Source: Ramazzottius varieornatus
Lineage: Eukaryota; Animalia; Tardigrada
NCBI GenBank assembly: GCA_001949185.1
Contig: BDGG01000013.1
Location: 1,380,617-1,444,616 of the forward strand
Direction of reading: 5' to 3'
Length of the DNA stretch: 64,000 nucleotides
Position numbers and translations under genes: made by a program
Notes under the pieces: generated by a model
What the model saw: the letters and a program-made list of their open reading frames with translations, nothing else
Told to the model about the DNA's origin: nothing
Databases searched by the model: none
Shown here: positions 5 to 59,966 of the stretch, one piece after another
Layout: every line of letters begins with the position of its first letter
Position numbering within the stretch: the first letter of the stretch is position 1

Positions 5-2345
5 GTTACCAAGCGTGAGCATCATCGTTCCTTTTCATAACGAACACTGGACGACGCTTCTACGGACAGCCAAGACGGTTCTCGTGCGATCTCCGCCGAA
101 GCTGATCAAGGAAATTATCCTTGTCGATGACTTCAGTACCAAAGGTACCTTTTTCTTTCTACCTCATGAATTTTTAACCGGACTTTGAACGGGAAAGGAT
201 GCGTTAACTTTTCCATTTCCGGTAGAGTTCTTAAAGTCTCAACTGGATGAATATGTTCGCGAAAACCTTCCAAAGACTCGCGTACTTCGAGCCAAGAAGC
301 GCGAAGGACTGATAAGAGCGCGTCTTCTCGGAGCCAAAGCAGCGCGAGGCGCTGTTTTGATCTTTCTAGATTCGCACTCGGAAGTTAACACCAACTGGCT
401 TCCTCCCCTGATTGGCAAGTTGTACACAAACTGCTTTCCATTCCCAGTTTCCACTCCGACTCCTCTTTCCAGAGCCCATAGCCTTGAACTATCGAAATGT
501 AACCTGTCCCTTCATTGATGTCATCGACTTCGACAACTTCGAGTACAGAGCGCAAGATGAAGGTGCTCGAGGAGCCTTCGACTGGCAGCTGTTCTACAAG
601 AGACTGCCGCTGCTGGAACAAGACCTCAAGCATCCAGCCGACCCGTTCAAGTACGACCGACGTACGCATTTCCCCCTCACTGGATACTAACTGCGTTTAA
701 TTGTCGTGCTTCACAGGAGCCCAGTGATGGCCGGTGGACTATTCGCCATCAGCAGCAAGTTCTTTTGGGAACTGGGCGGATATGACCCTGGCTTGGACGT
801 CTGGGGCGGCGAACAGTACGAACTCAGCTTCAAGGTGACAAAATCTTTATGGCCTTTATTCTATGTCTTCACGAGTATCATTTGCAGATATGGCAGTGTG
901 GAGGAGCGATGTACGACATTCCCTGTAGTCGAATCGGCCAGTAAGTCCTGTCTTTGCTCTGAAACCTCTCCACTATCTCCATAGGGGTTTATTCCTACTA
1001 TGACTGTCTAATTTCTTTCTTCTTTGCTTTCCAGCATCTACCGGAAGTTCTGTAAGAAACTTATAGCTTCCGGGACGAGGAAACATGATTCGAATTAGAT
1101 AGTTTTACCGAGTGGCGCATAATCTCAGCTAATAACAATGGAAACGTGCGCCACTTGACATAACAATCTGTTTGAGTTCCATTTTCTTACGTGCCATGTT
1201 TTTCTTGATCGGTGTAGCCATGTTGGTTTTTTACAGCGCCGTTCGGTGGTGCCGGTGTGGGTGACTACGTCAGTCGGAACTACCGTCGAGTGGCGCAAGT
1301 GTGGATGGACGAGTACGCAGAGTTTATCTACGATCACAAGCCTCACTATCGGACCCTCGACGCAGGTATGCCAGTAGAATTTGTTATTATTAAATGTTGA
1401 TAAGACCTCGTGGCTGCGGTTCTGCCTCCGAGTGAGTCTCTAACCACGGCACCATTTTGCAGGCGACATCTCAAAGCAGGTGGCGTTGCGGAAGAAGCTT
1501 CACTGTAAGTCATTCAAGTGGTTCATGACGGAAGTCGCCTTTGACTTGTTCGACCATTATCCACCCGTCGAACCACCCGACTACGCAACTGGAGAAGTAT
1601 AAAATCTATCAAAACTTTTGTTTGAAGTAAAATGGAAGGGGCAGACCAAATCGAGAAGATCGTGTCTCCGAGTGGCGCACGCACTCCGTATGGTTGGCTG
1701 CGAACGTGCGCCACTTGCAAAAACGATCTTCGCGAGTTTGTTTGCCTAGGTTCTCAATGTGCAATACTGAACAAAATGTTTCTGTTTTCAGATCCGGAAT
1801 GTGGCGAGTAATAAGTGTGTCGATACACGCTTCGGAGGTCAGAATCAGCGCTTTACGTTGGAGAATTGTCTCAAAGACAACTCTGAACATGGTGGCGAAC
1901 AGGTAAGACCTAGAAGTGTTCTTTGATCGATCTCTCAGACCGGAAGACTCATTACTTTTACATTTTCTGGTTGTAGTCGTTCGCTCTGACATGGCATAAG
2001 GATATTCGGCCAAAGAACCGAGCAGTCTGTTTCGACGTGGCGTCCAGTGAATCTAAAGCCCCGGTTGTATTGTTCAACTGTCATAATCTCAAGGGAAACC
2101 AACTATGGCATTACGTGCCGGTAGGACATTCGTTACACCTATGTTGCCGGTATTTTCCTGCGGCGTGCTTGTACAGCAGTATTACTTTTCAGGATAAGAA
2201 GCAGCTCTTCCATCCGATTTCCGGTAACTGCATGGACTGTGATCCGGAACGACGAGAAATATTCATGAGTAAGTGCGATACAACGAAAGATAGCCAGCAG
2301 TGGCTTTTCGAAAAGTACAATAGCACTCTGTTGGCCAAACTGTAG
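5..2345 (+). CDS. GALNT10: Polypeptide N-acetylgalactosaminyltransferase (GALNT10/pgant6 type), multi-exon, 5' end outside window
   Basis: Spliced exons give [21 protein letters not shown]...[28 protein letters not shown] (DxH), [22 protein letters not shown] and a C-terminal ricin-B lectin (GNQLW, QQW). Stop TAG at 2343-2345. Includes a GC-AG intron (416-471) and a 17-nt microexon (1035-1051). Confidence 0.93.
1111..1155. repeat. Type A inverted motif pair in GALNT intron 1052-1236
   Basis: AGTGGCGCA (1111-1119), 27 nt spacer, TGCGCCACT (1147-1155). Confidence 0.9.
1655..1731. repeat. Type A inverted motif pair in GALNT intron ~1598-1791
   Basis: AGTGGCGCA (1671-1679), 27 nt spacer, TGCGCCACT (1707-1715). 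Outer arms GAAGATCGT/ACGATCTTC. Confidence 0.9.
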
Positions 2346-2611: not shown

Positions 2612-3404
2612 TCACTTGATGCGGTGCATCTTTTGTTTGGCTTCCACTTGAGCAGTTTTTCGGTGCTATGAAACAACCAAGCTATCGTTCAGTCTACACT
2701 CCAAACCCATCGAGAAATAGGAAGCCGGCAAAAAGTCCCGGGACGATTGTTACCTCAAGCGGCGCAGTTTTCTTTGCTAATGGTCGGAAACATGCGCCAC
2801 CTGAGGTGATGATCCTCCGAGATTGTTCGCCGGCCTTTCATATTGATATTGTTTATTGGGAGGGAAGACTTACCTTGACCAGCTTGTTGTAGTCCTCGTC
2901 GAAGATGAAGTTCATCTCGAACTTCTTGCCTTCCGACGTCTCGAACTCCGTTGATAAGGTCCGTGTTTCCTCATCCCATTTGTAGGTAGTCTGGATAAAC
3001 CACAGTCAACGTATCTGCCAAGTTTCCAGAGAGGTTTCCACATACCGAAATGGTAGTGCCGGCCTTGTTCTTGGAGCTGGTTTTCTTGTTCAGCTGGAAT
3101 TTGACTTCCGTTTTCTGGCCGGAACTGGGGAGGGTGGTAGTCTGGACGTAGTCCGCTCCTTGTTTCGAGAAGGTTATTGTGGGAAGTAACGAGTCATCCG
3201 TTTGTTCTTTGGGTTCCGGCGCCGCGGGCTTCTTATCGCCTTCTATTTGTCCAACAAACAAGATTATGACTATGTTTGAACGCAACAAAATATTACGTAA
3301 AAAATCTTTTCCGTACTGTACGTACCTTCTCCTTCGGTGGCATCGGTGGGGACTGGCCTATCGTCGCTCCGGTCGTCTTGGAATGTGCCTAACCATTTTG
3401 CCAT
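2612..3404 (-). CDS. FABP/SAHS-like beta-barrel protein, 148 aa, 4 exons, no evident signal peptide
   Basis: Exons 3404-3326, 3242-3046, 2990-2874 and 2665-2612 join in frame with GT-AG introns of phase 1,0,0. Product: MAKWLGTFQDDRSDD...TITFSKQGADYVQTTTLPSSGQKTEVKFQLNKK...TTYKWDEETRTLSTEFETSEGKKFEMNFIFDEDYNKLVKHRKTAQVEAKQKMHRIK. Exon sizes and phases match the canonical iLBP/FABP gene layout. The strand pattern resembles tardigrade SAHS proteins (from recall, not a search). Confidence 0.8.
2753..2806. repeat. Type A inverted motif pair in FABP/SAHS-like intron 2666-2873
   Basis: CCTCAAGCGGCGCA, 26 nt spacer, TGCGCCACCTGAGG. Confidence 0.85.
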
Positions 3405-49100: not shown

Positions 49101-50516
49101 TATTTGAATCAATACGATGACTTGGCTAACTTCCCTGTCACGCTCTTTTCAAGATATCAAGTTTAGCTGGACTTCACCATAATCAAACCTAACCCCAGTC
49201 AAAGTTCACTGTCCCTGCGGAACTTCGCTCAGTGTTCCTCAGGACTAATGTAGCTTGGTGTTCCATCTCTTTAGTGAACATATTCTAAGCTTCAGTAATA
49301 TACTGTAATGCTTCAAAAACTTCGCGAAACACGTTGTCATACGTGCGAAACATCCCTTAGGGGGTTGTTAGGGCAAAATTTTCGGACCGGAGCTCAACTG
49401 CACGCGTATGATGGCGTGATTGGCGGAGTTCATGAAGCATTACAGTATAGTATCTTGTTGGTCACTTCGGTGTTCCCATCCGCTCATTATGTAAACCAGG
49501 TCATCATTCAGTGTGAGGGTTTCCGCCGAAGCCGTAGAGGTAGCAAGAGGTAATATATGGGACTCGGAAGTGACGTCCATTGACCGCTCCAGTATGCTGC
49601 GATGATGACCAAACAGCGTGCCGATACTAAGCTCTGTTTCATCTACCGATGGGTGGTACTCTTAGCCTCCTGGCCAACCCATCCAACATTTGTTATGGAT
49701 TCTTTTACGGCCATATTTCTTAGTTCGCGAGGCGGGTCAACTTGGCCGTTTTAGAAAGTTAAGATCAGCTTTCGATCATCCCGCTACGGGGGAAGATCAA
49801 CAGATAGGATCTCTGGTCCTCAGTATGTACGATCCTCCACACAGTCGTACNNNNNNNNNNNNNNNNNNNNNNNNNNNNNNNNNNNNNNNNNNNNNNNNNN
49901 CCATCGGTAGATGAAGCAGAGCTTAGCCGAAGATGCGCTAGAAGTCCGAATCCGAACAGCTAATCGGCTGAATTGCAACCTGTTAAAACTCCCAATTAAA
50001 AAGCTTACGTCACTGAAGTAGTTCAGGTCCGTCACTTCCGAGTTCTGTAGATTATTCCAGGATCGTCGGGGATCGAGACTATAGACGAGACTGTATAGAA
50101 TCATTTTGTCGGGACAGTTTGACTATCGGGACGTCGAGGCAGGCATAATCCCCTTGCCAGTCTGCAATGGTTACATAACAGCGTGTTATTTTGAGCCACA
50201 GCTTACCCACGATCCTCCTACGTTTCCGCTGTCAAAACAGCCACTAAATTCTCAAAGACGCCTATACCAAATGAATACCCAGGAACAAAATCTCGTGCTA
50301 TTGCACCTTTCGATCCTATTTTATTCGCCAGAACTTCGTCCGGCCCCAGAACTCTCCAGCTATGATATCAGGTAATGCTGGAGGGAAGTCCACGATGCTT
50401 AGAAGAACAGCGACTAAAACATTCTCCAACAGCGAAGCGAAAATCCACCACCGTATGAACCTCCAGCAAGCGATTTAAAATGATGAATACACAAATTATA
50501 CACACTGCCAACAGGT

Positions 50517-53500
50517 TCAAAAGAAGAAAGCATCATCATCTTCGTCCATCGGCTCTCCAGCCGGTGCCTTCTTTTCCGTCGACTTAACGTTCTCATCATC
50601 CGAATCCGACAAGTTCAAGTCATCTTCCAGCGCAGCCCTGCTAGCCACCGTTGGGACAGACGGCTCTTCCTTCAACTCCGCATCCTCATTGGCCATCGAA
50701 GGCTCGTTCGAGTCGTACTGGCTCACCTGGTTGCGAATAAGCATAGACGGTTCCCCATGATTCGACTCTTCCTCGTAGCCGGTCCTTGCATCTTCGTAGA
50801 ACCTATCGCTGGGCAGCGCGCTGACTTGTGTTCTGTTGGTGAACGGAGTGGGCGAAGGAGGATCGGAAGCCATTTTCGATCGACTATCTGCAAGCACCAC
50901 AAAGGGATTTCACCTCTCCGACGACAACAACCAAGCTTTTTTCGTGCTTAGTTTTCTCTACATGGGAGCTCAGGAAACAAACTCCGAGAGATCACTGCCC
51001 CAAGTGGCGCACGCTTCCAGGTCATCGCACTTAAAACGTGCGCCACTTGAGGAAACAACCTTTCGCTGCTCTCAAGTGGCGCACGCTGTTGCCAATAACC
51101 CCGGAAACGTGCGTCACTTGGGGAAACAATCTGATCGAGTTCGTTTGCCGATCTCACACATGATGCCCAACATCTTTCTTGACATATTTCCCCGAATATC
51201 TCCTGATATGTCTTTTGAAGAGTTTCTGGAATGATCATCCTCGAGTTGTTTCAAATAATCCGAAAATCACTAGGAATTAATGTGGAATGCTTCTCTCACC
51301 TTCGCGACTAAGTTTGCTGTCGTCCTCCATATCGGCATTCGAGTACGAGAAGACCGAGTCCAGTCTGAATTCTCGTCTGGAATGCGAGGTGGTGGGTCGA
51401 TCGTTATCGGAGACATGTGTGCCGCTAGATTCGGTTTCCTCTTTTATGGCGGTCTCAAGAGCGGCGATGCGGTCGCGTTCTTCCAGGCAGGCTGCCTCAG
51501 CTGCTCTAACCAATTCTTCTGCAGTGCGGGTGTGAGCAGAATCAGAGGATGAACCGTTGTACTTGATGCAGTTGTCCTTGATCAACGTCACATCCGCCAG
51601 GAACTGGTCTTTAGAGCGGTACTGATGGGACTTGGCCTTCTGCTCCATGGTGTCGAAATCCATGGGCTGCTTGATTTTCGTATGGTAGTCAGGGTATAGC
51701 TTCCGGTTGACCGGCGAATGGAACAAGGCTGAGCCTGTAACAAAAACAACAGAACTTGGATTACAGCCCCAAGTCGAACAAAAAGCCACTATCGAACTTC
51801 CGATATAATTCGATCTTCTTTAATGGGCTTCGTGATAAATGGCCGCTGAGCAAACAAACAACAGAACCAAATCATTTCCCAAGTGGCGCACGTTTCACTG
51901 TCATCGGCTGGAAGCGCGTGCGCCAATTGGGAAAACGATCTGCTCGAGTTTGCTCACCCAGCTCCCACATATCCCTGCTGAAAGTTTATCGTTTTGTGTC
52001 GAGATCCAAGATTTGAACTTTTCAAAATTTCTTTCCTGAGACCTACCTTCGACGGTTCTGAGGCCCTTTTCGATGATTTGCTGAAAGAGGTAGCTTAGTG
52101 CGATCTGGTCATCATCGTGCAGCAGCGGGTTGATCTTTTGCTCCTGGTCCCTCAAGACTTCTTCTCTTTGGCCGAACCTTCTTAAGCACAAGTCCACCAT
52201 ACTTTGGGCAGCCATTGTCAATGTACACTTTTCCCCTTTACCGTTGTACTTCTCGCAATTGGCATAGATCAGCTGAACGTCTTTAAGAAAGTCTTCCCTG
52301 GAGCGGTAGATGCCTTGGTTTAGCTTCTTTCGCATGGTGCTTAGGTCCATTGGGTCACTCACAATCAACTAGGAAGGAAAATGATTAAAATTCAGTCACT
52401 GAGATCAGAGAAACAACATTGCTCAAGACTATCATCCACCTAGGTACTTGATTATTACACGCATCACGGTTCGACAGGCATGCAGGTGGATGACGGTCTT
52501 CAGCAGAGGTATTCCGTTCGTGTTCTGCTATCACCGTCACGGACCTGCACACACGTTTACGCTACAACTGCATACAAAACGGTATGCAGGAGACTGACAG
52601 TTACGCTAAGTTCGTTTATTGATCTGGCTTCAAGTGCGGTATCACTTACCCCGTAGTCAGGATATATTTTGGGATTGACAGGCAGACGAAACAGCTCGCA
52701 GCCCGGAAGGTCCCGCATCTCGTCGAGAATCTCTTCGAGACTGCCAGCCAAGACGACAACTGGATCCACACGACGTCGCGAGCTGAAGAGCCGAGGTTTC
52801 TCAAGGTAGTCGGGCATGGAACCAGTACCCCCAGTGCGACGCTGCTTTTTGGGTCGCCCTGACCTCGCCCGGTCTTCGTCTTCTTCCCGATCGCGCTTCT
52901 CTTTTCTCCGAATCTTGGCCTCAATCGGATCCACTAAAAACAAACAAGCGGTTGAATGCAATACCGAGCTCGAAGGTCGTCGAGATTGTTCCGCCACGTG
53001 GCTCACGTTCCCAGTACTGCTGGTTGGAAGACTGCAACTATGACAAACAATCTTGCCGAGTTTGTTTTAATACCCTGCCCTTAATTCACAGCAAGCGGAA
53101 GACCATATTTCAAGTTTGCCGATTTTTCCCCAAACACTGTCAGTGATTTACTTTTCACTTGCCGGTTACTTACATGGTTCGACCGACTCTTCTCGTTCAA
53201 GGAGCTGCTTCGGTATCCTCAGCTTGATGCCTTCTTGTCGAATCAAGTTAGATTCATTTAAAACAGTCTTGCTCACTGTAATCTTGTTGCCCTCGACACG
53301 GACCAGTCCACTATCCGACGAGAGGTTTCCAAAGCGCTGGCTCTCTTCTTCCTCGGTCATGACCAGGTTCCTGGTCTCTCCAGCCATGGGACACACCGCC
53401 TTGTTGGTCTTCATATGACCCACCTGTCCACACGCGCCACACTTCACTTTGATCTCCTTCTCTTTCTTGGGCTTTTTAGGCTTCTTCGGCTTCGAAGTCT

Positions 53501-56500
53501 CTTCACCTTCCTGCAAACAACGTTAAGTTTCCAGAAAGAAGAGCTCGGTAAACGAGCTCGACAAGACTGCTTTCCCAAGAGACGCACCTTTCCACTGTTA
53601 TTAGCCGAAAACGTGCGCCGCTCGGTAGTCAACAAGACTGGTTTACCAAGTGGCGCACGTCTTCGATGTTGTCACATGGAAACGAGTGCCGAACAATTAT
53701 CTCCGTTCAGTTGTACGGTTCGATTGATTAGTGGATCTGGCTTACCCAAGTGCTGCTCTGCGCCGCTTCGTCGATCTCCAGTCGCTTCTGTATGGCGTCG
53801 CTTCGTCGCAGTTGTTCCTGCTTGCGCCGTTTCTCCTTTCTCAAAAGTTCTTTCCGTTCGGAATCCAGAGCCGAGAACTGCCTGATGAAGTTCTCGTCTT
53901 TGGAACGAATGCGGATGTAGGCATCGATCAAAGCTGGACGACTGACGATCTCGGTGCGGTCAAACTTTCTGCCTTCTGGATCGGTGAAAGTTCTCGTGAT
54001 CTTCAAACGACGGGTGGGTGCTGCTGGTGCTTCTTCCGTGGCCTCCGCACCACCAGCTGCCTTCTTTACCTTCTGCTTTTGCTTCTAAAAAGGCCAAAAC
54101 CATTTACAACATTGTTAGACCCAGCACTGTATGATTGAAAACCAAAAACTCTCATCCACTCGCATACAGTCCCACGATGCACAATGTACGAACAACGGCA
54201 TGCATGTACGTGAGAGAACAGTGCACTTTGTTTGCCTATATTCCTTCTGATCAGTTTACTCACCCTGTCTTTCTCGTCAGCTTCTTCTTTGTTGAGTAAT
54301 TTCTTCAGCTCCTTTCTCTCCTCTTCCTCGCGTTCGAATAGGAGTTCTTTATGGGACTTCTTGCTTTGAATTTGTATCTCTAGGTTCCTTCCCTGCTTCT
54401 CCATGTCCTCATCTTCCTCTTCGTCGCTGCTTTCTTCATCAGTCGACAGGACTTCGTCCGAGCCCAGTATCCTGTTCTGTAGCTCGAAGATTCTCTGGCT
54501 TTCCTCCTTGTACTTCTGTTGCTGCTCGGCGAACGAGTACTTGTTGCCTCGGGCGAACTTACTCATCTGCTCCTCGTTTCCGCCACGCGACTGCTGTGTC
54601 CCCAGGAACCGCACCAGATCAATGATCTCCCAACGCGAAAGCTTCTTGATCCTGTCTTCTGCTATGTTGGCAGCCCGGAGAAGATCCTTGGCTTTACTCA
54701 AGGACAATTTTCTCAAGTCAGCATCCGTTCCCGTTACCTACGAAAACAAGCAGACAACACAAAATCCGTCGGTGCTCATCCACCTACACAGTCACTCCTG
54801 TGTCTAACAATATAAGCAAGTATGCAGGTCCGTGAACAGTCAATCCATAGCAGTTCACACGCATCTCACGCACACCTGCATACATTACTCCACACGCCTG
54901 CCGTGTCAAACGAGTACGCAGGCAGGTGCACGGCCTCTTTACTGTTCGCGGACCGCACTAGACAACGAACTTGTTTCTTACCGTTCGTTTTGGTAGGGGA
55001 GGTCCTTCCTTATCAGCTTTGCTGCTGGCTATCCTGACATAGCTGAAGCCTTCTCCACGACCAGTCGGATCAGCGTTGCCCGTCAGCTGGAGAATACACT
55101 TGCCTCGAACGGCAGAGATGTAGGCTCGGGTTGTGTTCCATGGAGCAGCTTTGATCTCGTCGTCCATCTTAGACTGCTGCTCTTCGTCCCCGTCATCTTC
55201 AGTGGCCAGGATCAGCTTCTCGCCATAACCCGCGTCCTTCAGACGTTGCTCAGCAGAACGCATGCTGTAGTAAGCGCAGTAGTCTTCGGGACTACACAAG
55301 TCGCGAATTTCTTCTTCTGAAGGCAACCTAGAAAAACCAGGACCTAAGAAATGTTGCCTCATCGGTCCCACAACCGCACACAACTTTGCTCCTCACTTCT
55401 GAATTGCTTTGCTGTATCATGACATTGAAAAGAATCCTGGACACATACAGGACGTGGGCATACGAACTGCAACAGACCGTTCTCTCAAGTGGCGCACACT
55501 TTCAGCCAATCATAATGAGAACGTGCGCCACCTACGATAACGATCTGTTCGATTTAGTTGCTCCATGGTTTTCACCAATTTTCGACGTTGTTTCATATGG
55601 AATAACATACCGGAAATCGGGACGAAGTATCCACCATTGGGAATCAGGTCCGCTTCGATGGAAATCAGCGCACATCTTCAGCCGCTTCCTCAGCGTGCTT
55701 TCGCTTTGAGTGGAAGTGAAGAGCTTCTTAATTTCATCCGTCCGAACCTAAAACATTCAGGTCGATATTTGAAAGATCGGACTTCATTACTGGCGTATCG
55801 AACTACCTTTCTGGGTGTGTCTATGCTTTTCCAAAAGGCGCGATAGATGTGGGCCTGAAGGAAGTCCCGTTGAAAGTTGGTGGACTTTTTCGAGTTAGGT
55901 GCCGGGACGTCCGTCAGCGGGCTCTCTTGGCCCACCGTGAAGATGGTCGGAATCTCCCGAATGTAGTAGTGGTTCCGCGTTCTGATGATCAGGAAGTCGG
56001 TGGAAGACAGCTGGTGTTGGTAGATCGGTGCTCGAAACATGTTGTTCTCGAAGGCCTGGATGGCTTGTCCAGGAGCGAGAGCTCCAAGGAACGGCGAAGT
56101 GTGGGCGTAGACGACGTCACCGCCGTAATCGAACTTGGGCGGGTCTTCTGCTTCCTTTGGCTTTCTGTAACCAAAAAAAGCCGTAATAACATGTCCTTAC
56201 AACTGGAGGACTAACATGAAGCAAATCAAACAGGGATACACGTAAAGTGGAAAGTCAAGCACACAATCGACGTACCCCTCACGAACCTTCATACACGTGC
56301 TAATTGACTTCATACTGGCCACCTGTATGCACGTATGTGAAGGACTAGCTTTTCTGAGTACCTGCATACACTCTGTCACTTCGTATGTATGTATGTATGC
56401 AGGTTTCTGAGTTACAATATATATTTGCTAGCCATGCCGTTTAAAGTAGTTCTTGATCCGGGTAGCCATGCCGATCTGGCTGATCAGTGGCGGATGTTCC

Positions 56501-59500
56501 TCGCTATACTCCGCCAGGACAATTTCTCCATCCATCGCGCTCAAGTCCTCCGGCGTTCGCATGAAGAACATCTCACCCCCGCCCGACGCCACCCTTTCCT
56601 GTTCCCTCTCCTTGGCTTTCTTCTTGATGATCTTAGCCAGTGTCTCTACGGGATGAGCACCAGGCATCGTGATGGTGCCGTTGGAGTACTTCTTGAGGCC
56701 AGGACGGTGGTAGTTCCTTAGCTTGAGCAGGGTTAGGTTAGTCGGGAAGAAGTAACCGTAGAACTGCACAGCCGGGATGGAGTGCTGGATGGCCACCGCA
56801 CCCGTCGTTGTCTTCAGGTTACCTTCTTCCACTTTCGGCGAGTAGTACTCATCGTTGGAGAGGTTGAAGGGATCCTTCCAGTGGCTCTTGATCTCGTCAT
56901 GAGGCTTGGGCGAAGATGGCTGGTCCTTACTGATGCCTGCTTTCCTCAACACGCCGCTCGTCCTATAGAGGAAAAATTTCTCAGGAGTTACTAACTTGCT
57001 ACTGTCCGGAAGTAGCAGAAAAATGTCTCACAGCCTGCTCTCGTGATACCGGATCACCTCCGTTTCTAGTTTCAAAAATTCAAAGCAAGATAATAAAAAA
57101 CGGCAAACTGGCAAACGAAATGTGCAAGATCGTCATCTGAAGCGGCGCACGTCCTCAGCCAAAACCACTGAAAGTCTGTGCCACTCGAAAAAGCAATCTT
57201 GTACATTTCGTCTGTCAGCCTCCCATTATTCTCAGAAGTTCTCCGAAGAACCATTAAACGTGTTATGGCCCGGAAGTAACAGAAGCCGGGTGTCACTGCC
57301 GGTAATTGTAGCACAAAAGTACTTCGATTGCTCTTTGCCAAGCTCAGGATTTACCGTTTGTACGAGTCCTTCTTTTCTTTGCCTTCCTTGGCGTTCGTTA
57401 CAGGTTCCGGTGCGACCATCTCGTACTCTTCTTCGTCCGGAATACCGATGACAATGTTCGGGTCGTTGGGATCAAGCATGAGGACGGTGGGTTCTGGAAG
57501 GTTGTCCACATCTTCGGGGTCCCAGATGATGTCCTTCTCCCAGTTGCCGTTCAGTAGGTCTTCGTTCTCCGGCGGAAACATCGAGTCGTTCTTCAAGTCG
57601 AGCGGGGGAGGAAGAATGCTCGTACCGCCCTTACTAGCCGGTGCCAAAAAGCTCGAAGCCGTCCTAAAATGGACCAGCAGAACATTAGGCAAGAAAATTC
57701 TAACAATTTTTTCCATGTTTCATTTCAGACAGTTTTATTTTCTGCCCCTCTTGTTATACTTTTTGAACTAACTGAGGCAAATTGACTGGGCAAATGTAAC
57801 AAACCAGATCAGTGTCTCAAGTGGCGCACACTTTCAGCCGTAACATGAAACGCTGAAAAACAATAAAAATGTGCGCCATTTACGCCTGGTTCATTCCATT
57901 TGTCCACATCCTGGTTATCATTCTACTTTTTCTCTTGATGGGAAGCTTTTCTGCGTTAATCGCACCTGTAGACATTGCTGGGTATCCATCCAGCCACGGT
58001 TCGCTTATCCGCCAGAAGCTTCTCCACTTCCCTTTTGTGGTTCACGCCGTCCCAGATGATGTTCGACTCCCAGTGGGTCAGAGCTACCATCAGCAATGCT
58101 TCATCAGGCACCGGAACTTTGAGGGAAGCTTTAGTACCGTACGGAAATGAAGGAGGTTGAGGCTTGGCTTCTCGCTTCTTCTGTCGGGCGCCGTAGTCAA
58201 AGCCGGCGCCGGTTGGATCAACGTCCAGCTGATCGTACCAGTGCCGGGCTGGACCGTATCGCCAGCTGGGAATCACTTCAGAAGTCAGATCTTTAGGCTT
58301 TTCTGGCTCCTTAATCTCCTCACTCACACCTATGAAAACAAAAAAGGATAAAAAATCACAAGTTACCCATGGTCTAAACCATCGAAACTCGAAAGACCGA
58401 CAGAGGAAGCTCCCTGAATACAAACCAACCTGCGTACAGACAGGTCGTATTATGCAACTGACCGCAAGTATGCAGGTACGTAAAAGTTCAAAATACTGCG
58501 ACTTTGCTCGTTTCTTACCGGAAGGGTTTGGATGTTCGACAGTCACAGTCTCATCCGCGTTCTCGACTATGGTCAACACCGGACCATCTTGGCTGCTTTC
58601 TTCCGCGCAAGAAACGTCAACAGGAATCTCTTTCTCAGCACTCCTGCTGTAGATCGGCCATGGTTCCTCCAGCATACGTTCCAAAATTGCCGCCTCGTCT
58701 TCGTCCTCATCATCTGCTACTTCGCTGTCTAACGATGGAACGTCATGGAAGGCGACAGGGCGTGGCGGGAGCTTCTTTTTCCATCTTTTGGGAAGGCTAG
58801 ACGGTCGTCCACCTGTAAAGATTCTCGAGAAGCGCAGTGTCTTGTCAGGTCGGAACTCTGGAAAGACGTCAGTGACGTCGATTGAAGCGAGCTCTGGTGG
58901 CAGAACAGAAGCTAGAGGAGTATTGAGGCTTCGGAAGGTTTGAGTAGAGTCCGATGAGTCGAAGGAAGCAGATTCGGTGTCGACGGAAGCGCCGTCTTCG
59001 GCTGGTTGAGTGCTCTCATCAATCTGAAGCTTTATGCTGTGTGTGCTGTTTTGGCTGGAAGGCTCGACTGTATCTGGTTCTTCCTCCGAAGCTTCTGACT
59101 GTCCTTTAGATTCAGGTTCAGCGAGTACATCTAGAAAGGAACGGAATCGAGTTCGAATCGCCCCTAACATGGAAAAGGGAAACGGATTTGAAGTATCAAC
59201 CGACTCGCGCACCAGCATACTCTTAAGCACTGCTGTCGACGTAGCGAAAGCTATGTAGGTGCGTATAACAGCGTCTGCGACCACAGCACGAAAACTATAC
59301 CAGAACGACCTGCACCTACATACTGGCGCAGCGCGACAGATACACAGATTGGTGTAAGCAGGTCGATGAATCCACGCTAGAGTTTAATCTCTCGTGTTTT
59401 GCCCAGACTTACGTTCGATGGATGTAGTCAAAGGATGGATTCCTCGTTCTTGGCTGCTCACCAAAGAATCAGGTATCACTTCATCGCTGGAGGAAGGGTC

Positions 59501-59966
59501 TGAGCCTTGTACAGAAGGCTGGTCGATGGTCTCATCCAGATCGACTGCGTCGTAATCGTCCTTCATTTCAGTATCGTCGAAATCGAAGAAATCCACGGCT
59601 GACGGTGACTTCTGCTCAGCATCTCCTGACCCACAGGACATTCCGTCCGTCTGGGCTTTCGATTCTGTAACGGCATTCAATGCTTACACAGATTCAGACC
59701 GGTTGAAAGTATCAATATTGGTTGATACCTTCATCAGATGCGACTTCTTGAGAGACGTCTTTGATCTGAGTCGACAGGACGTTCAAGCCACCCGAGCTAA
59801 GGTTGGACAGATGTTCCTTGGCTTCTTCGTCTAGATAGTCCGATTCTAAACTGCCAGATTCCGAGACGTTTCCGAAGAGAAAGTTGGTAAGGGAGAAGGG
59901 CTGATCGGAAGCGTTGCCGTCCTCGTCGTCCCGGTCGGGACTTTCTTCATGAAGCGTCAACGACAT
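50517..59966 (-). CDS. TAF1: Transcription initiation factor TFIID subunit 1, about 16 exons
   Basis: TAND ([11 protein letters not shown]), [65 protein letters not shown], zinc knuckle [18 protein letters not shown], two bromodomains (PMDL/PMDF), acidic tail. Confidence 0.97.
51001..51120. repeat. Two tandem type A motif pairs in TAF1 intron 50888-51299
   Basis: 51003-51047 (27 nt spacer) and 51075-51118 (26 nt spacer). Confidence 0.92.
51882..51927. repeat. Type A motif pair in TAF1 intron 51735-52046
   Basis: AGTGGCGCA, 28 nt spacer, TGCGCCAAT. Confidence 0.88.
52438..52591. repeat. Two type B motif pairs in TAF1 intron 52369-52649
   Basis: ACCTAGGTAC-N30-GCATGCAGGT and ACCTGCACAC-N29-GTATGCAGGA. 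Confidence 0.7.
53578..53693. repeat. Two tandem type A motif pairs in TAF1 intron 53511-53745
   Basis: AGAGACGCA-N27-TGCGCCGCT and AGTGGCGCA-N27-AGTGCCGAA (degenerate right arm). Confidence 0.8.
54158..54207. repeat. Type B motif pair in TAF1 intron 54085-54263
   Basis: ACTCGCATAC-N30-GCATGCATGT. Confidence 0.6.
54782..54923. repeat. Two type B motif pairs in TAF1 intron 54738-54981
   Basis: ACCTACACAG-N28-GTATGCAGGT and ACCTGCATAC-N30-GTACGCAGGC. Confidence 0.75.
55471..55549. repeat. Type A motif pair in TAF1 intron 55328-55610
   Basis: AGTGGCGCA-N27-TGCGCCACC with outer arms AACAGACCGTT / AACGATCTGTT. Confidence 0.88.
56285..56404. repeat. Two type B motif pairs in TAF1 intron 56165-56437
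   Basis: ACCTTCATAC-N30-GTATGCACGT and ACCTGCATAC-N25-GTATGCAGGT. Confidence 0.78.
57121..57205. repeat. Type A motif pair in TAF1 intron 56963-57354
   Basis: AGCGGCGCA-N27-TGTGCCACT with outer arms TGTGCAAGAT / ATCTTGTACA. Confidence 0.85.
57820..57880. repeat. Type A motif pair with expanded spacer in TAF1 intron 57664-57883
   Basis: AGTGGCGCA-N43-TGCGCCATT. The right arm abuts the splice donor. Confidence 0.75.
58428..58477. repeat. Type B motif pair in TAF1 intron 58330-58518
   Basis: ACCTGCGTAC-N30-GTATGCAGGT. Confidence 0.82.
59211..59363. repeat. Two type B motif pairs in TAF1 intron 59131-59412
   Basis: ACCAGCATAC-N30-CTATGTAGGT and ACCTACATAC-N30-GTAAGCAGGT. Confidence 0.78.

What the first reader, a model, noticed from the sequence alone, without database searches (positions are those of the whole stretch)
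50888..59412. Every long TAF1 intron carries type A or type B units, never both; short introns carry none
Seen, with hand-derived introns. Type A in 50888-51299 (x2), 51735-52046, 52934-53173 (decayed), 53511-53745 (x2), 55328-55610, 56963-57354 and 57664-57883. Type B in 52369-52649 (x2), 54085-54263, 54738-54981 (x2), 56165-56437 (x2), 58330-58518 and 59131-59412 (x2). That is 13 of 13 introns of 179-412 nt, while the two ~60-nt introns have none. GALNT follows the same rule (2 of 2 long introns). The result is a site roughly every 0.5-1 kb along an essential gene. Inference: an intron-encoded two-motif marking system for long or constitutively expressed genes, for example anti-silencing licensing like nematode PATCs, chromatin or nucleosome organisation, chromosome-binding sites, or long-intron definition. 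This is the best candidate for an undescribed system in the window.
Basis: partly seen in the sequence, partly recalled or inferred. Interest (0 to 1): 0.9.

Follow-up and report, generated by a model that had tools for sequence, protein, structure and literature searches.

The report
Palindromic repeats filling tardigrade TAF1 introns
Every long intron of this tardigrade TAF1 gene holds exactly one array of one of two short palindromic repeat families. The pattern is real and not random, but it fits old mobile-element relics lodged one per intron better than a dedicated two-motif gene-marking code, and the strangely well-kept inner motifs stay unexplained.

Summary
All 13 long TAF1 introns carry type A or type B, never both, and the two short introns (59 and 64 nt) carry none. 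One intron boundary needs correcting: 57664-57965, not 57664-57883.

Type A is the core of a roughly 125-nt palindromic MITE-like element, with about 12,500 arrays in this 55.8-Mb genome (apparently Ramazzottius varieornatus). This scan met and followed up A many times in other windows of the genome.

Type B had only been noted before. It is a dyad of half-sites TCAYGN-ACCTGCATAC separated by 29-30 bp of unrelated sequence, about 2,500-2,900 units. No copy shares more than the arms.

Several features are not random:
- No A/B overlap in TAF1 (P = 0.006).
- A and B rarely lie within 250 nt of each other genome-wide (6 seen, at least 39 expected).
- B is about 12-fold enriched in TAF1.
- The boxes are about 90% conserved while the rest has decayed.

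Against a code:
- Independent A-A pairs also fall below a rough expectation.
- About half of the long introns elsewhere lack A and B.
- Host genes are varied.

Best reading (0.5): relics of palindromic mobile elements in pre-existing introns, one array tolerated per intron. Main rival (0.3): dyad binding sites kept by the host.

The parts
50517..59966 (-). TAF1 gene, from the start ATG at 59966 to the stop near 50517. It has 16 exons and 15 introns.
   Evidence: Pfam exon by exon. tblastn with mite TAF1. Sequence of the 5' end. Phase continuity.
50888..51299 (-). Intron 15 (412 nt) with two type A units. Boxes at 51002-51048 and 51074-51119. Element 50931-51195.
51735..52046 (-). Intron 14 (312 nt) with one type A unit. 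Boxes 51881-51928. Element 51802-51987. Hairpin -73 kcal/mol.
52369..52649 (-). Intron 13 (281 nt) with two type B units, 52438-52487 and 52543-52591.
   Evidence: No other genomic match to this intron.
52934..53173 (-). Intron 12 (240 nt) with one decayed type A element, 52930-53104.
   Evidence: nhmmer E = 7e-10
53511..53745 (-). Intron 11 (235 nt) with two type A units. Boxes at 53577-53623 and about 53648-53694.
54085..54263 (-). Intron 10 (179 nt) with one type B unit, 54158-54207.
54738..54981 (-). Intron 9 (244 nt) with two type B units, 54782-54829 and 54874-54923.
   Evidence: No other genomic match.
55328..55610 (-). Intron 8 (283 nt) with one type A unit. Boxes 55487-55533. Element 55416-55567.
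55748..55806 (-). Intron 7, short (59 nt), no A or B.
56165..56437 (-). Intron 6 (273 nt, GC-AG) with two type B units, 56285-56334 and 56360-56404. The second has a 25-nt spacer. The intron position is shared within 1 nt with TAF1 of other animals.
56963..57354 (-). Intron 5 (392 nt) with one type A unit. Boxes 57140-57186. Element 57088-57235. The rest of the intron is unique in the genome.
57664..57965 (-). Boxes 57819-57881, with the spacer lengthened to 39 nt. Element 57784-57938.
58330..58518 (-). Intron 3 (189 nt) with one type B unit, 58428-58477.
59131..59412 (-). Intron 2 (282 nt) with two type B units, 59211-59260 and 59314-59363.
59665..59728 (-). Intron 1, short (64 nt), no A or B.

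Best explanation
A and B are two unrelated families of short, non-coding palindromic repeats. They are most likely relics of miniature DNA transposons that lodged in introns that already existed.

Each unit carries two inverted copies of one box at a fixed distance. In A the box AAGTGGCGCACG is repeated 22-23 bp apart, inside a palindrome of about 125 nt. In B the half-site TCAYGN-ACCTGCATAC is repeated 29-30 bp apart. Units are often doubled in tandem with a period of 71-74 nt or more.

The boxes are inferred to be binding sites for a dimeric protein, in the simplest case the mobilising transposase. That would explain why only the boxes and their spacing are shared by all copies.

Insertions survive only in introns. 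A second array in an occupied intron is rarely kept, presumably because this compact genome (mean intron about 160-180 nt) selects against longer introns. The result is one array per intron and therefore 'A or B, never both'. TAF1, with 15 introns, is nearly saturated.

Shown: the anatomy, copy numbers, spacing, mutual avoidance, the uniqueness of B spacers, and the ancestral position of one B intron.

Inferred: mobility (above all for B), the identity of the binding protein, and selection on intron length.
For: Abundance.
- A and B are dispersed genome-wide: 241 and 245 perfect units against 0 in the reversed-pattern controls.
- About 45 A arrays in 200 kb of random sample gives about 12,500 arrays. 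B is estimated at 2,500-2,900 units.

Type A anatomy.
- A has a 125-nt palindromic consensus.
- Copies are 70-90% identical to each other and fold into strong hairpins (z -4.6 to -7.9).
- When both arms of a copy deviate from consensus they stay complementary in 57% of cases against 33% by chance. This is expected if source copies were themselves palindromes.

Position within introns.
- Only the element part of an A intron is repeated; its flanks are unique.
- Element positions within introns vary, so the elements do not supply the splice sites.

Introns pre-date the elements.
- B intron 56165-56437 lies within 1 nt of an intron seen in genomic TAF1 fragments of other animals.
- The two sequenced tardigrades have equal exon numbers per gene, while intron length differs two-fold (PMC5531438).

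One array per intron is general.
- A-to-B pairs within 250 nt number 6 against at least 39 expected.
- A-to-A pairs at 100-250 nt number only 88, many on lattice multiples by inspection, against about 180 expected from random assignment, a hand estimate.

Not a universal mark.
- 0 of 11 short and 4 of 9 long predicted introns in random DNA carry A or B.
- Other long introns hold other dyads.
- Hosts are varied.
- A units lie in both orientations in TAF1.

Shared architecture. B resembles A in having inverted boxes, a fixed spacer, tandem doubles from a 71-74-nt period upward, about 89-90% box identity, and an intronic location.
Against: Weak transposon credentials for B.
- No target-site duplication was seen.
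- Spacers and flanks are at random similarity.
- No relative was found by whole-genome BLAST, even for a unit with perfect arms.
- No autonomous partner is known.
- If the non-box parts of B were ever homologous, arms at 89% identity beside fully randomised spacers require selection after insertion.

Slow box decay in A. The independent per-arm divergence within copies is 10% in the boxes against 25% in the outer arms. This is more than element-level constraint alone predicts, although imperfect source palindromes and alignment error inflate the outer figure.

Length limit is not sufficient. A hard cap on intron length does not by itself forbid B (62 nt) in A introns of 235-312 nt, since TAF1 tolerates 412 nt.

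Unexplained features.
- The exact partition of 13 long introns into 7 A and 6 B (P = 6e-4 to 6e-3).
- The roughly 12-fold excess of B in TAF1 (P = 1.6e-5).
- TAF1 B units are not closer to each other than to outside units (P = 0.08), so local hopping does not explain the excess.
Confidence: 0.5

Rival explanations
1. Host-maintained dyad sites. The A boxes and B half-sites (about 30,000 half-sites in all) are binding sites for one or two host proteins. They were seeded long ago by mobile elements and have since been kept by purifying selection on sequence and spacing. One array per intron is then a functional layout, for example in chromatin or nucleosome organisation, or in coupling transcription with splicing along certain genes. 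This is.
For: - Boxes are 90% conserved against 64-65% elsewhere in A.
- Independent decay within copies is 10% in the boxes against 25% in the outer arms.
- B arms are about 89% identical per site with random spacers and flanks and a spacer held at 29-30 bp.
- Arm mismatches are not compensated, so sequence rather than pairing is kept.
- TAF1 shows exactly one array per long intron (P = 0.006 or less) and a roughly 12-fold excess of B.
- A and B avoid each other genome-wide.
- The tandem period of 71-74 nt is shared by both families.
Against: - No functional, expression or cross-species data could be obtained.
- About half of the long introns in random DNA lack A and B.
- Hosts are heterogeneous.
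- A density in TAF1 is near the genome average for intron DNA.
- Conserved boxes beside variable remainders are also what selection for transposability among source copies produces.
- Box divergence of about 10% is similar to the roughly 12% per-copy divergence implied by nearest-relative identities of 76-80%.
Confidence: 0.3
2. RNA-level role. The palindromes act in the pre-mRNA as hairpins that shorten the effective length of long introns for a spliceosome tuned to short introns, or they are precursors of small RNAs.
For: - A elements fold into hairpins of -56 to -73 kcal/mol, far beyond shuffled controls, and some B units fold better than shuffles.
- The elements are found in introns, not exons.
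- Changes in both outer arms tend to preserve pairing.
Against: - The best-kept parts are specific sequences, not pairs. B arm mismatches are not compensated.
- Three of six B units fold no better than shuffles at z above -2.
- A units lie in both orientations.
- No Rfam family matches.
- Many long introns lack A and B.
- Read data could not be reached.
Confidence: 0.1
3. Introner-like origin. Each A or B array created its own intron when it inserted, which would give one array per intron by construction.
For: - Exactly one array per long intron.
- The A intron 56963-57354 is absent at that position from some arthropod-like genomic TAF1 fragments.
Against: - Arrays sit at variable distances from both splice sites, with unique flanks of 11-180 nt.
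- Splice sites are not part of the repeat.
- B intron 56165-56437 is at an ancestral position.
- The protein alignment is continuous across introns.
- Exon counts are equal in the two tardigrade genomes.
Confidence: 0.05

Closest known systems
Palindromic miniature inverted-repeat transposable elements (MITEs), such as the short mariner- or hAT-derived MITEs of animals and plants (own knowledge)
   Same: Short, non-coding and high in copy number. Inverted arms. Hairpin-forming. Enriched in and near genes. Type A fits in all these respects.
   Different: The best-conserved part lies inside the element (two boxes 22-23 bp apart), not at its tips. For type B the copies share nothing but the boxes and the spacer length. 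No target-site duplication and no autonomous partner were seen.
Bacterial REP/REPIN and BIME elements mobilised by RAYT transposases (own knowledge)
   Same: Short imperfect palindromes. They occur singly or as inverted pairs with a less conserved spacer, in tandem clusters and in thousands of copies. Conservation is limited to the recognised motif.
   Different: Those are bacterial and intergenic. Here the elements lie in the spliceosomal introns of an animal, and no HUH-type enzyme has been linked to them.
SINE superfamilies with a highly conserved central domain (HCD-SINEs; abstract of PMC11481361, listed)
   Same: A mobile-element family in which one internal block is conserved far better than the rest, for reasons still debated.
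   Different: Those are retroposons with pol III promoters and LINE-derived tails, not palindromes.
Periodic An/Tn clusters (PATCs) in C. elegans introns (own knowledge)
   Same: An intron-resident DNA signal proposed to mark genes.
   Different: PATCs are 10-bp-periodic A/T runs without a fixed motif. A and B are GC-containing dyads with a fixed spacer. No link to the germline was tested here.
Introner elements (transposons that create introns; own knowledge)
   Same: One element per intron.
   Different: Introners make up the whole intron and bring or create its splice sites. Here the element is internal, at a variable position, and at least one host intron is ancestral.
Paramecium internal eliminated sequences (own knowledge)
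   Same: Thousands of short segments with unique interiors, a weak inverted terminal consensus and a narrow size class near 26-30 bp. They are thought to be transposon relics whose ends are kept by constraint. This is the closest formal parallel to type B.
   Different: Those are excised from the somatic genome by a domesticated transposase and lie in coding DNA too. Nothing suggests DNA elimination in tardigrades.

Membership tests
MITE (type A) | Short non-coding element in high copy number, with copies homologous along their length | tested here: met
   About 12,500 arrays estimated. 74 local copies align over about 125 nt. Genome matches are 70-90% identical.
MITE (type A) | Terminal inverted repeats | tested here: met
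   The whole consensus is a palindrome: 36 of 37 mirrored outer positions are complementary.
MITE (type A) | Target-site duplication flanking each copy | tested here: inconclusive
   An ungapped scan of 44 units gave no clear signal at the outer ends. Earlier scan notes report 4 bp, which was not checked here.
MITE (type A) | Related autonomous transposon with the same ends | not tested
MITE (type B) | Copies homologous along their length | tested here: not met
   Spacers and flanks are at random similarity. Whole-genome BLAST finds only self.
MITE (type B) | Inverted terminal motifs and high copy number | tested here: met
   245 perfect units against 0 in the control. About 2,500 units by this estimate. 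The half-site is 16 nt long.
MITE (type B) | Target-site duplication | tested here: inconclusive
   No excess of flanking direct repeats in 22 units.
Introner | The element spans the intron and supplies or creates the splice sites | tested here: not met
   Arrays lie 2-180 nt from either splice site, with unique flanks.
Introner | The host intron is absent from orthologues | tested here: inconclusive
   The B intron at 56165-56437 is shared within 1 nt with other animals. The A intron at 56963-57354 is absent from some arthropod-like fragments but present in a close relative. Only two introns could be examined.
PATC-like intronic licensing signal | 10-bp-periodic An/Tn clusters | tested here: not met
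   The consensus sequences of A and B contain no such runs.
PATC-like intronic licensing signal | Enrichment in germline-expressed genes and protection from silencing | not testable with these tools
Known structured RNA family (Rfam) | Match to a curated covariance model | tested here: not met
   Only three sub-threshold chance hits across 50500-59700.

The most novel reading that the evidence does not exclude
The B half-sites, and perhaps the A boxes, are sequence-specific dyad sites kept by the host with a fixed spacer. There would be thousands of them, confined to introns, laid down as exactly one array per long intron in a subset of genes such as TAF1, a brahma-like gene and a cullin. That would be an undescribed intronic cis-element system read by a dimeric DNA-binding protein.
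Probability: 0.28. Interest if true: 0.8.

Novelty: new variant of a known kind. Interest (0 to 1): 0.5.

Why it matters
If the mobile-element reading holds, this is a clear case of how palindromic mini-transposons shape intron length in a very compact animal genome, apparently under a rule of one array per intron. That is useful for annotating tardigrade genomes and for work on intron-size constraints.

Type B is invisible to similarity-based repeat finders, because only 2 x 16 bp are shared. It would therefore be missed by standard repeat masking.

If instead the boxes are kept by host selection, the genome holds tens of thousands of conserved dyad sites in introns of unknown function. That would open a directly testable question about intron-resident chromatin or splicing signals in an animal known for extreme stress tolerance.

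Tried and rejected
Splicing and small RNAs remain untested.
The contigs behind a 94%-identical relative (P0001) and a 76% relative (P0002) could not be fetched.

Searches that led nowhere.
- Metagenome scan for type B: 7 contigs. All were chance hits, an adapter artefact, or a long foldback repeat of an unrelated organism. At first I thought its outer arms resembled type A, but the A profile finds nothing there, so I dropped the idea.
- No paper describing these elements was found.

Analyses that gave no clear result.
- Ab initio coding models were too weak for a census of introns. A strict intron predictor gave only 28 introns, with no false positives in the reversed control. It was used only as a small sample.
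- Target-site duplication scan: no clear result.
- A fixed distance of B arrays from the 5' splice site: 33-58 nt in all six TAF1 introns, but 32-154 nt elsewhere. Not a rule.
- Local duplication of B within TAF1: not supported.
- B-B clustering at 251-500 nt: at the chance level.

Ideas considered and left as untested resemblances.
- Splice-site mimicry by the B arm (it contains CAG|GT).
- E-box and tRNA A-box likenesses.

Step left out by rule. The spliced TAF1 model was searched exon by exon only, and the joined protein was never built or searched.

Full report
**Setting.** The window is contig 13, 1380617-1444616, of a 55.8-Mb assembly in 200 contigs. Size and contig number match the published Ramazzottius varieornatus genome (PMC5531438). 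That paper gives 12.4 Mb of introns, about 5 introns per gene in 13,917 genes, and a mean intron length of about 160-180 nt.

**The gene.**
- Exon-wise Pfam searches gave DUF3591 twice, the TAF1 zinc knuckle and two bromodomains.
- tblastn with the Tetranychus urticae TAF1 protein tiles the minus strand from 59933 to 51400.
Phases agree from exon to exon.
- One boundary is wrong. With a donor at 57883 the upstream exon has stops in all frames. With the donor at 57965 the frame is open and correct, the homologue alignment is continuous, and the A element, which runs to 57938, lies wholly inside the intron.
- The short introns are 55748-55806 and 59665-59728.

**The observation.**
- A profile of type A made from genome copies hits each of the seven claimed introns.
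- A half-site matrix for type B, built only from copies outside the window, finds paired arms in each of the six claimed introns. Shuffled and reversed controls gave almost nothing.
- No intron has both types and the short introns have none.
- With 7 A and 6 B introns among 15, the chance of no overlap is 0.0056. It is 0.0006 if only the 13 long introns count.

**Type A.**
- The dyad AAGTGGCGCACG-N22/23-CGTGCGCCACTT occurs 241 times in perfect form and never in the reversed control. The spacing distribution is 22-23 nt with almost no exceptions.
- It is the centre of a palindrome of about 125 nt.
- 45 arrays in 200 kb of arbitrarily chosen DNA gives about 12,500 arrays genome-wide.
- Units are often doubled at a 72-nt period.
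- In the 392-nt intron 5 only the element (positions 129-270) matches elsewhere in the genome, at 70-90% identity.
- As RNA the TAF1 copies fold into hairpins of -56 to -73 kcal/mol.
- Earlier follow-ups of this scan, on other windows of the same genome, reached the same description: an old palindromic MITE with about 9,000-18,000 copies and inner boxes that decay more slowly. I re-tested the last point in two ways.
  - Among 74 copies not chosen for their boxes, identity to consensus is 0.90 in the boxes, 0.64 in the loop and 0.65 in the outer arms.
  - A test that does not depend on subfamily structure compares the two arms within each copy. It gives an independent per-arm divergence of 10% in the boxes and 25% in the outer arms. 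Double deviations stay complementary in 57% of cases.
- The source copies were therefore palindromes, and the boxes decay about 2.5 times more slowly. Imperfect source palindromes and alignment error in the outer arms would inflate this ratio.

**Type B.**
- ACCTGCATAC-N27-32-GTATGCAGGT occurs 245 times in perfect form against 0 in the control, with a mode at 29-30 nt.
- The half-site extends outward to TCAYGN. Beyond that, flanks and spacers carry no information, and spacers are no more alike than shuffled ones.
- By eye, the first spacer bases next to the arm show a weak recurring A..RACC pattern. So the spacer is mostly, but not wholly, free.
- Whole-genome BLAST with two TAF1 B introns, and with a locus holding three units (one with perfect arms), returns only the query itself. 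That search could not have seen 30-nt stretches at about 76% identity.
- From the counts of perfect arms and perfect pairs I estimate about 2,500-2,900 units and 89% per-site identity in the arms.
- Mismatches in the two arms are not compensated. Sequence is kept, not pairing.
- Units are usually doubled: 154 same-strand arm pairs at 60-250 nt against about 5 by chance. By inspection of the listing, many have a 71-74-nt period, the same as type A.
- Where I could name the host, B lay within the gene span of TAF1, a brahma-like SWI/SNF ATPase, a cullin, a band-3 transporter and a C2-domain gene. It sits between or beside their exons.
- First readers had noted B in other windows, but as far as I could see nobody had followed it up.

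**How special is TAF1?**
- If all arrays were intronic, the 3.7 kb of TAF1 intron should hold 3.8 A arrays. It holds 7 (P = 0.09).
- It should hold 0.5 B arrays. It holds 6 (P = 1.6e-5).
- The B units of TAF1 are not closer to each other than to units elsewhere. They are not recent local copies.
- In the random sample a strict intron predictor, with no false positives in the reversed control, found 11 short introns, none with A or B. It found 9 long introns, 4 of them with A or B.
- Two of the other five long introns hold different dyads.
- So 'every long intron carries A or B' is true of TAF1 but not of the genome. The sample is small.

**Mutual avoidance.**
- Genome-wide, an exact A box is followed within 250 nt by an exact B arm only 6 times, and within 250-500 nt only 18 times. 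Uniform placement predicts at least 39 per bin.
- By hand I estimate that random assignment of arrays to the roughly 70,000 introns predicts about 70 detectable cases.
- The same holds within a family. A-A pairs at 100-250 nt number 88, and by inspection many fall on lattice multiples. Independent double insertion would give about 180, again a hand estimate.
- The rule is therefore 'one array per intron', not 'A excludes B'.

**Were the introns there first?**
- Genomic ORF fragments of TAF1 from other animals break off right after the residues NYYKR and read on as Val-Ser, which is GTRAGT translated. This lies within 1 nt of the donor of the B intron 56165-56437.
- A 94%-identical relative has the A intron 56963-57354 at the same place, with a very different intron sequence. 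Some arthropod-like fragments read through that position.
- Arrays lie at variable distances from both splice sites and have unique flanks.
- The two tardigrade genomes have the same number of exons per gene.
- An introner origin is therefore unlikely.

**Reading.** I commit to relics of two palindromic mobile-element families in pre-existing introns, with at most one array tolerated per intron (0.5). The boxes would be the cis-sites required for mobilisation. That explains why all lineages share them and their spacing while the rest drifts.

This reading has clear weaknesses.
- B has none of the usual transposon hallmarks.
- Its arms are 89% intact beside fully randomised neighbours.
- The A boxes decay more slowly even within copies.
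- B is strongly concentrated in TAF1.
- A simple length ceiling does not forbid a 62-nt B unit in a 240-nt A intron.

These points support the main rival: dyad sites kept by the host (0.3). An RNA hairpin role (0.1) fits the folding energies but not the uncompensated arm changes or the mixed orientations. No Rfam family matches.

**Limits.**
- No read data, no orthologous DNA and only 264 kb of unselected genome sequence.
- The intron census rests on a crude predictor.
- The copy numbers are extrapolations.

Noticed in passing
The donor is at 57965 (GTGCGA), giving a 302-nt intron. There is no 27-nt micro-exon and no 55-nt intron here.
   Followed up: yes
window 56165-56437: This intron has a GC-AG splice pair. 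Its donor lies 1 nt upstream of the phase-0 position used by other animals at the same site, an apparent 1-nt shift.
   Followed up: partly
window 56993-57020 and 57257-57284: Two 28-nt direct repeats (79% alike) flank the A element in intron 5. Each is itself a small palindrome (TGCTACT..AGTAGCA type). They may be a third element type or part of a composite.
   Followed up: no
L012:6341-6408 and L021:7024-7100: Long predicted introns without A or B hold other dyads: 11-nt perfect arms 46 nt apart, and 16-nt arms 45 nt apart. Further intronic palindrome families may exist.
   Followed up: no
genome contig C1 (coordinates listed): Perfect type A units are bunched regionally: 8 between 1.8 and 2.1 Mb and 15 between 8.2 and 9.1 Mb, out of 33 on a 9.3-Mb contig. 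Perfect type B units are spread more evenly.
   Followed up: no
TAF1 type B introns (window 52369-59412) and L008: B arrays start 33-58 nt downstream of the 5' splice site in all six TAF1 introns, and 37 nt downstream in L008. Elsewhere the distance ranges up to 154 nt. This is a tendency, not a rule.
   Followed up: partly
listing; window 56285-56404: By inspection of the listing, many tandem B doubles have a 71-74-nt period, the same as type A doubles and about half a nucleosome length. The short linker between the units is often a palindrome specific to that copy.
   Followed up: no
L031, L032, L035 (metagenome contigs JAAUYG01): An unrelated organism carries a long, perfect foldback repeat whose inner part contains the same 10-mer as the B arm and a similar CACG flank. 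I judged this a coincidence.
   Followed up: partly
window 189-2342 (+) and 2666-2873 (-): A GALNT gene (GT2, Glyco_transf_7C and ricin-B exons) has type A elements between its exons. A further A element lies in a well-scoring intron of a neighbouring minus-strand gene.
   Followed up: partly
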